Assembly: GCF_032062105.1 (NCBI RefSeq)
Contig: NW_026921444.1
Coordinates: 62,001 to 126,000 of the forward strand
DNA length: 64,000 nt
Reading direction: 5' to 3'
From: Saccostrea cucullata
Lineage: Eukaryota
Of this stretch, positions 43,871 to 59,147 are shown piece by piece; the stretch's first letter is position 1; each line of letters starts with the position of its first letter. Both the position numbers and the translations under genes were made by a program. The notes below the pieces were generated by a model that made no database searches, was not told the origin of the DNA, and saw nothing but the letters and a program-made list of their open reading frames with translations.

Positions 43871-44171
43871 CATCCATAATGCCAACCCAAACAGATCGAG
43901 TATAGGAGAATTTCCAAATACTTATTGGCTTGATATGTTTTATAAGAAAATTTAAGAATTTGGAATCCTCTACATGAATGTGCCATATAGGACGTATAAA
44001 CAGCCTTGAAATGCATTGTACCATAAAACACTGTACAGTGTTTACTATTATGAAAATGAGAAAATGCACAACTTCGGTTCGTGTCTTTATACACAGGCAA
44101 TGTAAGAATTTACTTAAATTTTACTTTCAAGAATTTACGAAAGAGAAGCGAAAATACCATAGAAGACATTC

Positions 44172-45671
44172 TTATGTAAAAGGAAATTCTTCTTCTTCCT
44201 CAGACGAATCTCTAAATCTCCGAGAAAAGCTAAGGAATGGGTCAATCCTACGTCTAGAGCCGAATAGAGAGGGTTTTCGATGCAAGTAAAGTGGTCTCCG
44301 ATATCCATTATCTTCCTTATTTCGTATCAATCTCTCTATATTATTTTCTGGACCAGGAAATACATTCCAATATGTATCCACGGCAAAGGCTTTTATGGTA
44401 CCATCATTACTGTCCCCTATCCAAATCTTACTGGTATTGTCTGTATAAATACTGCATGGACTTTCACAGTCTTCACAAATGACGAGTCCCATGAAGACAC
44501 CTGTTGGTGAAATAATGTGTAAAGTTTTAGTTGTCCCGTTCAACACAAGAAAACTGTCATCTGCGAATGATGTGACTGAAAGTGGCTTGAATTCTTCTTC
44601 GATTTGCTCTAAAGTGCATCCGGAGTATCTTTTGATTAAATGTCCATCCATGCCCCTGATATCTACAAAATTTATTTCTGCATACAGTATACACATAACA
44701 GAACAACTATCATTAACAGCAAGAGAATGAGGGTAGGATTCCACTTTTAAATCAAATTTGTCAAGTTCCTTGCCGGCATTGTCTAAAACCTGTCCAATAA
44801 GAGTTGACCGGTTTCCCATCCCCAAAACAAGAATTCGATCCTGCTGAATGGAGCATATTTTCAGAGGGTCGCAATCCTTAATAGAAATCACGGACACATC
44901 GGTGCTATTAAACGTCGTTTTCATAACTAAAGAACAATTCCGTATTAAGGAAAATATTGTTCCATCCCCTGAACCACAAAGATCTGTAGCGCCATCAACA
45001 ATCGGATTTTCACTCAAGACCAAACCATTCCGCGTGTCAAAAACGCGACAGATAGAGCCACCAAATGTTAGAAATGCAGATACGTCCTCTGATACTTGAA
45101 ATATAGACGATATACACTCCTCTTCTGCTACCTGGACACCAATTCTCATGGAAACAGTCTTCACGATAGTTGTTGGTCCATGTTTACGCAATTCAACGGG
45201 AACTGGCTCGTCTTCACTATCACTAGATACAGAGTTCGTCTCAGAAACACTGGAAGAGTCCCAGTCCGTGTCCGAATCCAGAAAAGAAGAAAATGATGGA
45301 CGCCTTTGTCTCTTTATTTCTTTGCTAGGTCTTTTGCATATATGTACAGGTGCACAGAAGGAGCACAGATACTTGTCACAATAATCGCAATCATCTACGT
45401 CATCTTCCTCTGCATTGCAGACGTCACAGACGCGTTCAGGGAAAATGTCCCGGATGAAATAATTATCCCAGAATCCCGCAACACCGTTTTCCGGTAACAC
45501 CATCACGGTTCTGCAAAGTGGGCACCGAAATTCGTCATCTGACTTGTACTTTCTTTGGTAACCTGAGATGCACCGCTTACAAAAAGTGTGTTTACAAGGC
45601 AACATCTTTGGACATTTAAAACTGTCCAGACAAATAGAACATTTTTGAGCATCGTCTATCGATATCTCCAT
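44172..45671 (-). CDS. RING (C3HC4) + B-box-like + acidic linker + NHL-like beta-propeller E3 ligase, paralog A (499 aa)
   Basis: CSIC...LPCKHTFCKRC...CPLC; CDVC-x9-CDYC-x4-CSFC-x3-H; Ser/Asp-rich linker; NHL-like repeats such as PCSIYTDNTSKIWIGD; uninterrupted ORF. Confidence 0.88.
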   Translation of the reverse strand: MEISIDDAQKCSICLDSFKCPKMLPCKHTFCKRCISGYQRKYKSDDEFRCPLCRTVMVLPENGVAGFWDNYFIRDIFPERVCDVCNAEEDDVDDCDYCDKYLCSFCAPVHICKRPSKEIKRQRRPSFSSFLDSDTDWDSSSVSETNSVSSDSEDEPVPVELRKHGPTTIVKTVSMRIGVQVAEEECISSIFQVSEDVSAFLTFGGSICRVFDTRNGLVLSENPIVDGATDLCGSGDGTIFSLIRNCSLVMKTTFNSTDVSVISIKDCDPLKICSIQQDRILVLGMGNRSTLIGQVLDNAGKELDKFDLKVESYPHSLAVNDSCSVMCILYAEINFVDIRGMDGHLIKRYSGCTLEQIEEEFKPLSVTSFADDSFLVLNGTTKTLHIISPTGVFMGLVICEDCESPCSIYTDNTSKIWIGDSNDGTIKAFAVDTYWNVFPGPENNIERLIRNKEDNGYRRPLYLHRKPSLFGSRRRIDPFLSFSRRFRDSSEEEEEFPFT

Positions 45672-45675
45672 TGTC

Positions 45676-45854
45676 CTATATTAACGAAATAAACGAACAT
45701 TAAGATTTTGGCAAGTAAATATATATTAAAATTTAAGAATACCCGGTATCACTAGAACAAAACTACTGACTTTCGGTTTGACATTGGGGATTTCCTTCTA
45801 ATTGATAAAGGTGTATCGTGAATGGGGATCAATGAGTTTAAATAGCTTACTTAC
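45676..45854 (-). other. Predicted 5'UTR intron of paralog A
   Basis: Donor AG|gtaagt at 45854 and acceptor tatag|GACA-ATG at 45676; an alternative donor TG|gtaagc lies at 45915. Confidence 0.55.
45769..45795. promoter_or_regulatory. Composite IRF-type element plus NF-kB site in the A/B divergent intergenic region
   Basis: ACTTTCGGTTTG at 45769-45780 (reverse CAAACCGAAAGT, one mismatch to the IRF consensus GAAASYGAAASY) lies 5 bp from GGGGATTTCC at 45786-45795, an exact match to GGGRNYYYCC. Confidence 0.6.
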
Positions 45855-45948
45855 CTATTTATATTATGAAAATCCCTGACTACTCAAAAGAACATTTCAG
45901 AAGCCACCGGCTTACCAGAAGCTGGAAGTTGTTGATTTCTAGATCAAG

Positions 45949-46318
45949 GTAAATTAATGCACTTGTTTTTTTACTTTTTATTTTTGAACGGAAGAGAGAA
46001 GACAACATTAACCCGTCAACTTGTGTTTTTCTACTTTCGTTTAGTAGGCGGATGGAATTGATAGCTTCGAATCACTTTCCTTTGTTTTTGTACATACATT
46101 AATAATAAATATATTTATTTATAAATGAAAATGTATTCATCATTTAATTTTAGGATTTCAACAAGAGTAATGTTAAACTTGATTTCAAATAGAAGGAAAT
46201 AAATACATGTATTCGATTGATATCGGCAAAATGGCAAACATGTTTTTTATATTTTTAAAACTCTTTGATATTAAAATAAAATAACTTTTAAAGAGTAAAA
46301 CATACTTAATTTCTACAG
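45949..46318 (+). other. Predicted 5'UTR intron of paralog B
   Basis: Donor AAG|gtaaat at 45949; branch-like cttaat followed by ttctacag| ending at 46318, 19 nt before the ATG. Confidence 0.55.
46028..46085. promoter_or_regulatory. Additional IRF/ISRE-like GAAA elements
   Basis: TTTCTACTTTCGTTT (reverse AAACGAAAGTAGAAA) at 46028 and CACTTTCCTTT (reverse AAAGGAAAGTG) at 46073. Confidence 0.4.
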
Positions 46319-46337
46319 CTTAAAAGGAAGTTAAAAG

Positions 46338-57764: not shown

Positions 57765-59147
57765 ATGGATACAGGAGAGGAGTCAAGCACATGCGCCATT
57801 TGTTTTGATTCTTTTCTATGTCCTAAAATTCTCTCCTGCCGTCACACCTTCTGCAAGCCGTGTCTCGAGGATTATACAAAGAAAGTGGAGGTGGACGAAA
57901 TAGTCTGTCCGTTATGTCGACAAAAGCAGATATTGGACTGCCGGGGTTTGGATGGATTGATGGACAACTATTTTGTACCTTTGAGGGCACCGGAACTTCC
58001 GGTTATTCTTTGTTGTGATATTTGTTACGAGGAGGCAGAGGTCAACCAATGCTCACATTGTATTCTTAAGCTGTGCTATTCCTGCAAATCATCCCACAAC
58101 CTTGCACTGAAAATGTCGGGTGAAAAAGCTGGATCGGATTTAGATTCCGAGGCGTCCGAGGGGAGTGATTTATCAGAAGATGGCGGAATGATCTCGATAC
58201 GCTCTTTAGTGCAATCAGATCATTCATCAAGAACAAAATTAATTGCAGACTTTGTTTCTGCTTTTAAAGTACCATGTAATACTCTAAATGATCAGCCATC
58301 GATTTCATGCATTTTTCCTAAATCGGAAGAAACTTGCTTGGTTATTGTGGACCTCGGTCCGGAAATCATTGAATGCACGCTAAACGGAAGGCCGTTCACA
58401 AGTAAGTGTTTCAGTGAAGGGATTCGTGGAATAACTAAGTCCTTAGACAATAAAATTTTGTTTTCAAACGTGCATGAAGCAGCCATTTTTCAAATGGTTG
58501 ACGAAACTCGCATAAAAATCTTTGCAAAATGTTATGAATTTAGGCCTTCGTCCTTATCTGCATTCAAGGACGGAAGAATCGTTTCCGTTGGGTCTGAGAA
58601 TAACTTTCATCATATTGCTAAACGTTCGGAACACCACGGAGCATTGCAAATATATGACACTGATGGGAAATTGTTGAGAGAAATAGTGAAAGATGGGAGA
58701 GAACTTTTATTCAAACATCCTGTGAGCGTTTCAGTAAATCCTAAAAACGATACAATATGTACAGCAGATGCAAAACTGAACCAAGTACTTGTTATGACAG
58801 AAGAAGGATATGTAATTAGAAAGTACAAAGGGACAAATACCGGTAGTGATGATGGACATTTTGGAATACGACTAAGTATCGGCATCTTTATTCCTACGGC
58901 CCTGTGTCATGACGAGGAAGGAAATCTCGTGATAGCCAACGTTATTGACGGATCTCTGCATATTCTTCTTCCCAACGGAGATTTCTGTGGTTTTATAGCC
59001 ACAAGGAATAATAGAAATTTCGGGAATCCTAATAGTCTTTGTTTTGATAGCAAGAATAGGCTCTGGGTTGGTGACCATCGAAACGGAAAAGTAAAAATAT
59101 TTGAAATTCTGTCTTTTAGAAATAATTTAATCGGTTGTGAACACTAA
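57765..59147 (+). CDS. RING + B-box-like + acidic linker + NHL E3 ligase, paralog D (460 aa; closest to C)
   Basis: CAIC...CRHTFCKPC...CPLC; CDIC-x8-CSHC-x4-CYSC-x3-H; shares CPLCRQKQxLDCRGL and SSRTKLIADFV with paralog C; NHL repeats. Confidence 0.9.
   Translation: MDTGEESSTCAICFDSFLCPKILSCRHTFCKPCLEDYTKKVEVDEIVCPLCRQKQILDCRGLDGLMDNYFVPLRAPELPVILCCDICYEEAEVNQCSHCILKLCYSCKSSHNLALKMSGEKAGSDLDSEASEGSDLSEDGGMISIRSLVQSDHSSRTKLIADFVSAFKVPCNTLNDQPSISCIFPKSEETCLVIVDLGPEIIECTLNGRPFTSKCFSEGIRGITKSLDNKILFSNVHEAAIFQMVDETRIKIFAKCYEFRPSSLSAFKDGRIVSVGSENNFHHIAKRSEHHGALQIYDTDGKLLREIVKDGRELLFKHPVSVSVNPKNDTICTADAKLNQVLVMTEEGYVIRKYKGTNTGSDDGHFGIRLSIGIFIPTALCHDEEGNLVIANVIDGSLHILLPNGDFCGFIATRNNRNFGNPNSLCFDSKNRLWVGDHRNGKVKIFEILSFRNNLIGCEH

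What the first reader, a model, noticed from the sequence alone, without database searches (positions are those of the whole stretch)
45672..46337. Interlocked bidirectional promoter of paralogs A/B with an IRF + NF-kB composite element
Seen: only 666 bp separate the two ATGs. Splice signals predict a 5'UTR intron for each gene (A: 45854-45676 on minus; B: 45949-46318 on plus), so the two donors are only about 94 bp apart. Each gene's upstream region would then lie inside the other's first intron. The A intron holds an IRF-type site 5 bp from an exact kB site (GGGGATTTCC). The B intron holds further GAAA-N-GAAA elements, and a near-kB site (GGGATTTTCA on minus) lies at 45867-45876. Known: adjacent IRF/kB sites characterise virus-inducible promoters such as IFN-beta, and oysters have IRF and Rel factors. 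Inference: A and B are co-induced antiviral response genes.
Basis: partly seen in the sequence, partly recalled or inferred. Interest (0 to 1): 0.78.

Follow-up and report, generated by a model that had tools for sequence, protein, structure and literature searches.

The report
Conserved IRF/kB divergent promoter in oysters
Two back-to-back oyster RING/NHL ubiquitin-ligase genes share a short promoter whose IRF-type and NF-kB-type sites are kept in four to five oyster lineages, so it is probably a real immune-type switch, but one of the two predicted introns is wrong and induction by infection is untested.

Summary
The sequence facts hold: the two ATGs are 666 bp apart, an exact kB decamer lies at 45786-45795, an IRF-type site (AANNGAAAGT, minus strand) lies 5 nt from it, and a kB-like site lies at 45867-45876.

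RNA reads confirm the 5'UTR intron of gene B exactly (45949-46318, GT..AG). The predicted intron of gene A (45854-45676) is not used. A's 5'UTR reads straight through that acceptor here and in three other oyster species. The minus-strand donor at 45854 is real, but it joins 13.7 kb away to exon 2 of a DPP7/peptidase-S28-like gene, skipping the whole of A.

By count, a single kB site in 64 kb is chance level. Conservation settles the matter. The same order, IRF site, 5-6 nt, kB-like site, AAAATCCC, B donor, second IRF-type site, recurs in Saccostrea echinata, Ostrea edulis and two to three further oyster lineages. These blocks are the only conserved islands in otherwise unalignable DNA, and 0 of 3000 shuffles reproduce the composite in each lineage tested.

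Best reading: a compact, anciently conserved divergent promoter with an IRF/kB composite at its centre. It resembles TAP1/LMP2 or MHC-I promoters. Immune co-induction remains inference. I class it as a new member of a known kind, of moderate interest.

The parts
44172..45671 (-). Gene A, a single coding exon of 499 aa with a RING finger and a divergent NHL-like propeller
   Evidence: ORF. Pfam RING hits. RNA contig covering 44218-45730. 85% identical to S. echinata LOC133179036 and 64% to O. edulis LOC125679445.
45672..45730 (-). A's 5'UTR, transcribed and unspliced. It runs through the predicted acceptor at 45676. The true 5' end is not mapped.
   Evidence: X1 record 1 covers 44218-45730. Orthologous mRNA contigs have colinear 133-165-nt 5'UTRs.
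45769..45780 (-). IRF-type site 1, CAAACCGAAAGT (core AANNGAAA plus GT)
   Evidence: Invariant core in the 5-species alignment. Lies inside a 36-nt stretch identical to S. echinata.
45786..45795 (+). Exact kB decamer GGGGATTTCC. The other lineages have GGGGATTTTC or GGGGTTTTTC.
   Evidence: The composite is reached by 0 of 3000 shuffles in each of three other lineages.
45819..45948 (+). B exon 1 (5'UTR), given as its minimum extent. The TSS is not mapped.
   Evidence: X3 record 12 covers 45821-45946 joined to 46317-46882, and X1 record 2 covers 45819-45948. The libraries are unstranded, so part of the 5' extent may come from the other strand.
45855..45961 (-). Upstream exon on the minus strand. 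It overlaps B exon 1 in antisense. Its donor (GT at 45854-45853) joins to 32113. The 5' limit is a minimum.
   Evidence: Loose ends at 45855 (4 reads in X22, one X1 contig) and at 45961 (3 reads in X21). Depth is zero over 46015-46296. The loose end maps uniquely.
45867..45876 (-). kB-like site GGGATTTTCA. Its core AAAATCCC (45869-45876 on plus) is invariant in all lineages.
   Evidence: Lies inside a 31-nt stretch identical to S. echinata.
45949..46318 (+). B's 5'UTR intron, 370 nt, GT..AG
   Evidence: Joint 45946/46317 (cut +2) in X21, X22 and X3, with matching loose ends in X1. The same intron is spliced out in spX and spZ RNA contigs.
46031..46042 (-). IRF-type site 2, AAACGAAAGTAG. It sits inside B's intron and upstream of the minus-strand exon.
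   Evidence: It is the best-conserved tile of the whole region: score 15-16 against a null maximum of 12-14.
46319..47789 (+). B exon 2, with the CDS at 46338-47789 (483 aa, RING plus NHL-like propeller)
31974..32113 (-). Coding exon of a DPP7/Peptidase_S28-like gene. It is the acceptor used by the 45854 donor.
   Evidence: Pfam PF05577 with E 6e-10. The match is unique in the 1.17-Gb genome.

Best explanation
The 666-bp interval is a compact divergent promoter shared by two ancient RING/NHL-propeller paralogs. At its centre lies a composite of one IRF-type site and one kB-type site, 5-6 nt apart.

A is transcribed leftwards with an unspliced 5'UTR. Its mRNA contigs end about 40-75 nt from the IRF site. 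B is transcribed rightwards from at or just beyond the kB site. B's 5'UTR carries one 370-nt intron that holds a second conserved IRF-type site.

A third transcript starts on the minus strand inside B's intron, near that second IRF site. It overlaps B exon 1 in antisense, uses the donor at 45854, and splices across A into exon 2 of a DPP7-like gene.

Shown: the gene pair, B's intron, the non-use of A's predicted intron, the long-range splice, and purifying selection on the four short elements across oyster lineages.

Inferred: oyster IRF and Rel/NF-kB proteins bind these elements and co-induce A and B during immune, probably antiviral, signalling.
For: Anatomy.

RNA in the window's species: B's junction appears in three independent studies. 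A and B are both expressed in all four runs. A's contig is unspliced to 45730. No contig among those shown covers 45731-45818, the stretch holding the composite.

Orthologous loci keep the head-to-head pair with 500-760 bp between the ATGs: S. echinata L007, O. edulis L008, spX L001, spY L003.

Footprint:
- In the 5-species alignment the only invariant runs are the IRF site with kB, AAAATCCC, and IRF site 2.
- The element order is identical in all six sequence sets.
- Against S. echinata the region is 78% identical with many gaps, and the two longest exact matches are the 36 nt over IRF+kB and the 31 nt over the kB-like block.
- The composite ACTTTCNNTT, 5-8 nt, GGGRWTTYYC is reached by 0 of 3000 dinucleotide shuffles in each of O. 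edulis, spX and spZ.

AANNGAAAGT is about 30-fold enriched in the interval.

Literature:
- Oyster IRF2 and IRF8 activate mammalian ISRE and IFN-beta reporters, and oyster TRAF6 activates a kB reporter (PMC5557890).
- TRIM and E3-ligase genes are among poly(I:C)-primed genes in C. gigas (PMC7064767).
Against: - No expression data under immune challenge were examined, so induction is pure inference.
- TSSs are not mapped. The libraries were unstranded and contig ends are not TSSs.
- In spX and spZ, RNA contigs run straight across the composite. There it is transcribed in at least some molecules, so an RNA-level role is not excluded.
- The IRF sites are single AANNGAAA cores, not full two-half-site ISREs. 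There is no strict GAAANNGAAA.
- The kB-like sites of Ostrea, spX, spY and spZ miss the vertebrate consensus at one position.
- IRF site 2 has G to A in its core in spX and spY.
- The sister paralogs C and D lack such sites.
- The strict composite occurs only once in the 1.17-Gb genome, so it is not a visible genome-wide module.
Confidence: 0.6

Rival explanations
1. Both A and B have 5'UTR introns, A exon 1 ends at 45855 and joins 45675, and so each gene's promoter lies in the other's first intron.
For: Both splice signals are good consensus matches. The minus donor is really used. It is kept in five of six sequence sets. An AG just upstream of A's ATG exists in Saccostrea, Ostrea and spX. 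A rare isoform below the tool's reporting threshold cannot be excluded.
Against: No 45855-45675 joint was reported, although the B joint was listed with only 2+2 reads. All loose ends at 45855 go to 32113. RNA contigs of A read through the acceptor in the window's species, O. edulis, spX and spZ. spX has lost the donor and spZ has no AG acceptor.
Confidence: 0.08
2. The conserved blocks are ordinary core or constitutive promoter elements bound by other factors. Candidates are ETS or PRDM-type factors on GAAAGT, and a non-Rel factor on the G-run/T-run. On this reading A and B are housekeeping-type co-expressed genes that are not immune-induced.
For: A and B are expressed at low, similar levels in all four unrelated runs. 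Orthologs appear in hundreds of RNA assemblies, which suggests basal expression. The sites deviate from the vertebrate two-half-site ISRE and, outside Saccostrea, from the kB consensus.
Against: The pairing of an IRF core with a kB-like decamer at fixed 5-6-nt spacing in every lineage is what IRF/Rel composites look like. A second IRF-type site and a second inverted kB-like site are also conserved. Basal expression does not exclude inducibility.
Confidence: 0.25
3. The conserved blocks act in RNA, as 5'UTR or antisense-exon elements that control translation, stability or splicing, rather than as DNA sites.
For: Block 2 (45856-45886) lies inside B exon 1 and at the 3' end of the minus-strand exon. 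In spX and spZ the IRF/kB block is also covered by RNA contigs.
Against: No Rfam family matches. Nothing beyond one 16-nt inverted repeat was seen, though no folding or covariation test was run. IRF site 2 is intronic for B. The blocks match well-known DNA motifs in sequence and spacing.
Confidence: 0.05
4. The motifs are chance occurrences in AT-rich intergenic DNA.
For: The kB consensus count in the window equals the chance expectation.
Against: The motifs are conserved in order and spacing across six sequence sets. 0 of 3000 shuffles reach the composite in each of three other lineages.
Confidence: 0.02

Closest known systems
Human TAP1/LMP2 (PSMB9) shared bidirectional promoter (PMC2191963)
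   Same: Two divergently transcribed genes of a common pathway lie a few hundred bp apart (593 bp there, 666 bp ATG to ATG here). There is no clear TATA dependence. One NF-kB element near one gene serves both directions. The IRF-E/GAS sites of that promoter are my own recollection, not read here.
   Different: There the partners are unrelated proteins (a transporter and a proteasome subunit) and the transcripts do not overlap. Here the partners are paralogous E3 ligases, one has a 5'UTR intron carrying a second IRF-type site, and an antisense transcript overlaps exon 1. Function is shown there and only inferred here.
IFN-beta enhanceosome (PRDIII-I IRF sites abutting the PRDII kB site) and the MHC class I Enhancer A + ISRE module (own knowledge, not tested here)
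   Same: An IRF-type site and a kB decamer sit within a few nt of each other in a proximal promoter. Read on A's strand the order is kB, 5 nt, IRF site, as in MHC-I promoters.
   Different: There is a single AANNGAAA core instead of tandem IRF half-sites. No ATF/Jun or HMG-type sites were recognised. The orientation relative to B is opposite to IFN-beta. It serves two genes at once. No binding or cooperativity data exist.
Invertebrate IRF- or Rel-driven promoters, such as shrimp Vago activated by IRF (PMC4602278, listed), and oyster IRF activity on ISRE reporters (PMC5557890)
   Same: Lophotrochozoan and arthropod IRF and Rel factors recognise vertebrate-type ISRE and kB sequences, so endogenous targets with such sites are expected.
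   Different: The reporter assays read here (PMC5557890) used mammalian reporters. Here an endogenous composite is defined by phylogenetic footprinting but not by function.

Membership tests
Bidirectional (divergent) promoter | Two genes on opposite strands, head to head, with starts less than 1 kb apart | tested here: met
   The ATGs are 666 bp apart. The same arrangement holds in S. echinata, O. edulis, spX and spY.
Bidirectional (divergent) promoter | Both genes are transcribed, with TSSs mapped inside the shared interval | tested here: inconclusive
   Both genes are expressed in four runs. The 5'-most RNA evidence is 45730 for A and 45819 for B, but the libraries are unstranded and contig ends are not TSSs. 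In spX and spZ, contigs bridge the gap.
IRF-binding element (IRF-E / ISRE) | Core AANNGAAA; a full ISRE has two GAAA half-sites 2 nt apart | tested here: inconclusive
   The AANNGAAAGT core is present at 45769-45778 and 46033-46042 and is conserved. The strict GAAANNGAAA is absent from the interval.
IRF-binding element (IRF-E / ISRE) | Bound and activated by an IRF protein | not testable with these tools
   Only indirect support: oyster IRF2 and IRF8 activate mammalian ISRE reporters (PMC5557890).
kB site | Decamer GGGRNWYYCC | tested here: met
   An exact match lies at 45786-45795 and is identical in S. echinata. The other lineages have GGGGATTTTC or GGGGTTTTTC, with one mismatch at position 9.
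kB site | Bound by Rel/NF-kB and needed for induction | not testable with these tools
   No binding or reporter data exist for this site.
Virus-inducible (interferon-stimulated-gene-like) promoter | Transcript level rises on viral or dsRNA challenge | not tested
   The single read-laying run was used to test the junctions. No challenge data set could be laid. No paper names these loci.
Interlocked promoters (each promoter lies in the other gene's first intron) | Gene A uses the 5'UTR intron 45854-45676 | tested here: not met
   No such joint was found. The donor joins 32113 instead. A's RNA reads through the acceptor in four species.
Interlocked promoters (each promoter lies in the other gene's first intron) | Gene B uses the 5'UTR intron 45949-46318 | tested here: met
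   GT..AG joint in X21, X22 and X3, with loose ends in X1. The orthologous intron is removed in spX and spZ RNA.

The most novel reading that the evidence does not exclude
An IRF-kB composite with fixed 5-6-nt spacing has been held under selection since before Saccostrea, Ostrea and other oyster lineages split. On this reading it works as an enhanceosome-like, cooperative IRF/Rel switch that fires two E3-ligase genes in opposite directions. A second IRF site would drive an antisense transcript that splices over gene A into a lysosomal peptidase gene. That would place cooperative IRF/NF-kB promoter logic outside vertebrates and their interferons, and it would provide the first endogenous, footprint-defined reporter for mollusc antiviral signalling.
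Probability: 0.3. Interest if true: 0.7.

Novelty: new member of a known kind. Interest (0 to 1): 0.45.

Why it matters
Mollusc antiviral signalling (RLR/STING, then IRF and NF-kB) has mostly been probed with mammalian reporter plasmids. Few endogenous cis-elements are defined. A short promoter of about 130 bp whose IRF-type and kB-type sites are pinned down by conservation across oyster genera is a ready-made, testable native reporter. It also points to two coil-less RING/NHL ligases as likely pathway targets. The corrected gene models also matter for annotation: A's 5'UTR is unspliced, and a long-range splice from this promoter runs into a DPP7-like gene.

Tried and rejected
- Motif counts in the window alone gave a chance-level kB count, so I could not argue from counts.
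- A three-species MAFFT alignment with shuffle controls failed to align block 1 and flagged only IRF site 2. Alignment-based statistics were unstable, so I switched to tile-wise local alignment and to regex-plus-shuffle tests. With 30-nt tiles the IRF+kB composite scores 14 against a null maximum of 14 in 3 of 40 shuffles, which is borderline on its own. The order and spacing test is what carries the claim.
- A genome-wide search for the strict composite found only this locus, so no regulon was detected.
- Paralogs C and D lack the motifs.
- Rfam and repeat scans of the interval found nothing relevant.
- Literature searches for the O. edulis and S. echinata gene ids and for the SRA run ids found nothing.
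- P0003 could not be traced to a contig.
- The species behind loci spX, spY and spZ could not be named.
The exons were searched apart, by reference.

Full report
**What is in the sequence**

The window is AT-rich eukaryotic DNA. It carries four single-coding-exon paralogs with an N-terminal RING finger and a divergent NHL-type propeller:
- A, minus strand, 45671..44172
- B, plus strand, 46338..47789
- C, plus strand, 49263..50642
- D, plus strand, 57765..59147

A and B align end to end at 26% identity (E 2e-37). A is 85% identical to Saccostrea echinata LOC133179036 and 64% to Ostrea edulis LOC125679445.

- The ATGs are 666 bp apart.
- GGGGATTTCC lies at 45786-45795.
- CAAACCGAAAGT on the minus strand lies at 45769-45780, 5 nt away.
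- GGGATTTTCA on the minus strand lies at 45867-45876.
- Consensus donors lie at 45854 (minus) and 45949 (plus).

There is no strict GAAANNGAAA in the interval. There are three AANNGAAAGT sites out of ten in the whole 64 kb. The kB consensus count in the window (2) equals the chance expectation of 2.2, so counts alone prove nothing.

**RNA evidence**

I laid two raw poly-A RNA runs and two RNA contig sets from three studies on 43900-48100.

B's 5'UTR intron is exactly as predicted. A GT..AG joint removes 45949-46318. It is seen in reads of both raw runs and in a 692-nt contig (45821-45946 joined to 46317-46882). Matching loose ends appear in the third study.

A's predicted intron was not seen. 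No joint 45855/45675 was reported. A 1516-nt contig covers A's CDS and continues unspliced through the predicted acceptor to 45730.

Four reads and one contig that end at 45855 continue into a 30-letter sequence. That sequence maps, with one mismatch, to window 32084-32113 and nowhere else in the 1.17-Gb genome. This is the first base of a coding exon with a Peptidase_S28 (DPP7/PRCP-type) match. That gene's signal-peptide exon lies at 39715-39497.

So the minus donor is real, but its intron is 13.7 kb long. The intron contains all of gene A, an acyltransferase-like gene on the other strand, and the peptidase's own first coding exon.

The upstream exon has no ATG in frame with the peptidase. 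This isoform therefore looks non-coding or like an alternative 5' leader.

Three reads run past B's donor to 45961, while depth is zero over 46015-46296. This suggests, but does not prove, that the minus-strand transcript starts inside B's intron. The libraries are unstranded.

I searched the peptidase exons apart, by reference, and did not join them.

**Other species**

Homolog searches and contig look-ups gave these loci:
- Genomic loci with the same head-to-head pair: S. echinata (L007), O. edulis (L008, L004), and two unnamed oysters, spX (L001, L002) and spY (L003). spX and spY are 91% identical to each other here, so they are close relatives and count as one lineage.
- RNA contigs: O. 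edulis A (L009, L010), spX (L011-L013) and a third unnamed oyster, spZ (L005, L006, L014).

What the RNA contigs show:
- O. edulis A mRNA contigs carry a 165-nt 5'UTR colinear with the genome.
- The spX A contig carries a 133-nt colinear 5'UTR.
- The spX and spZ contigs L011 and L014 run from A's CDS through the whole intergenic region to B exon 1, and then jump B's intron into B's CDS.

So B's intron is spliced in three species, and A's predicted intron is unused in four.

The minus donor is kept in the window, S. echinata, O. edulis, spY and spZ. It is lost in spX.

**Conservation of the motifs**

In a five-species alignment the intergenic DNA is barely alignable: 47-53% identity with massive gaps outside Saccostrea. 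The only invariant runs are these:
- ACTTTC(G)GTTT ... TGGGG.TTT.C, which is the IRF site plus the kB site
- AAAATCCC, the kB-like site
- CTACTTT.GTT, the second IRF-type site in B's intron

The order is identical in all six sequence sets:
- A's ATG
- the IRF site
- the kB-like site, 16-17 nt start to start
- AAAATCCC
- B's donor
- IRF site 2

Against S. echinata the region is 78% identical with many indels. The longest exact matches are 36 nt over IRF+kB (45762-45797), 31 nt over 45856-45886, and 16 nt over IRF site 2.

A loose composite pattern (IRF core, 5-8 nt, kB-like) is reached by 0 of 3000 dinucleotide shuffles in each of O. edulis, spX and spZ. Tile-wise local alignment singles out IRF site 2 clearly. 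It gives the composite only a borderline score on its own. A three-way MAFFT alignment misaligned block 1. The claim therefore rests on conserved order and spacing, not on one alignment.

**How it most likely works**

The 5'-most RNA evidence for A lies 40-75 nt to the left of the IRF site in three species. For B it lies from inside the kB site (spZ) to 24 nt right of it (window).

I read this as one nucleosome-free divergent promoter of roughly 90-130 bp, with the IRF/kB composite at its centre serving both genes. A second IRF-type site lies 85 nt into B's intron. It may act as an intronic enhancer, as the promoter of the antisense transcript, or both.

Literature that bears on this:
- Oyster IRF2 and IRF8 activate mammalian ISRE and IFN-beta reporters, and oyster TRAF6 activates a kB reporter (PMC5557890).
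- TRIM and E3-ligase genes are among poly(I:C)-responsive genes in C. gigas (PMC7064767).

These make IRF/Rel control plausible. Binding, cooperativity and induction are all inference.

Caveats:
- The IRF sites are single cores.
- Outside Saccostrea the kB-like sites miss the consensus at one position.
- IRF site 2 has a core change in spX and spY.
- The composite is transcribed in some molecules in spX and spZ.
- Paralogs C and D have no such sites.
- The strict composite is unique in the genome.

**Comparison with what is known**

The closest analogue is the human TAP1/LMP2 bidirectional promoter. It is 593 bp long, and one NF-kB site is required for TNF induction in both directions (PMC2191963).

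The adjacency of IRF and kB sites recalls IFN-beta PRDI/PRDII and the MHC-I Enhancer A/ISRE module. This is from my own knowledge and was not tested here.

This locus works like those promoters on paper. Membership in the class 'virus-inducible promoter' is untested. Membership in the class 'interlocked A/B promoters' fails on the A intron.

**Verdict**

- It is a new member of a known kind: a conserved immune-type divergent promoter.
- Interest is moderate.

Noticed in passing
window 45855-45961 (minus) joined to 32113-31974 (minus): RNA from two studies splices the minus-strand exon that ends at 45855 directly to exon 2 of a DPP7/Peptidase_S28-like gene 13.7 kb away. The splice skips gene A, an acyltransferase-like gene on the other strand, and the peptidase's own signal-peptide exon (39715-39497). 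There is no in-frame ATG, so this is probably a non-coding or alternative-leader isoform.
   Followed up: partly
L007 6047-7500 (minus), S. echinata: The B ortholog in the S. echinata assembly is split into ORFs of 137 aa and 306 aa and is not among the called genes. It is either a pseudogene or an assembly error. The IRF/kB and kB-like promoter blocks are nevertheless 100% identical to the window.
   Followed up: partly
window 45790-45805 and 46185-46200: A 16-nt inverted repeat, 94% complementary, links the 3' half of the kB site and its flank to a site in B's intron. It is partly kept in S. echinata only.
   Followed up: no
window 47790-49262 and 56265-57764: The upstream regions of paralogs C and D carry none of the IRF-type or kB-type sites found between A and B. 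If the sites are functional, the cluster is split into differently regulated pairs.
   Followed up: partly
window 45677: A 2-nt deletion relative to the window appears in the X1 RNA contig, next to the predicted A acceptor. Reads differ from the window by 1-10% throughout. The sampled animals are therefore divergent haplotypes or a close sister taxon of the assembled one.
   Followed up: no
L001 525-1883: The spX genomic contig carries a third RING/NHL paralog downstream of the A ortholog, on the opposite strand. O. edulis has one at L008 10255-11640. The window has none between A and the acyltransferase-like gene, so cluster content varies between oysters.
   Followed up: no
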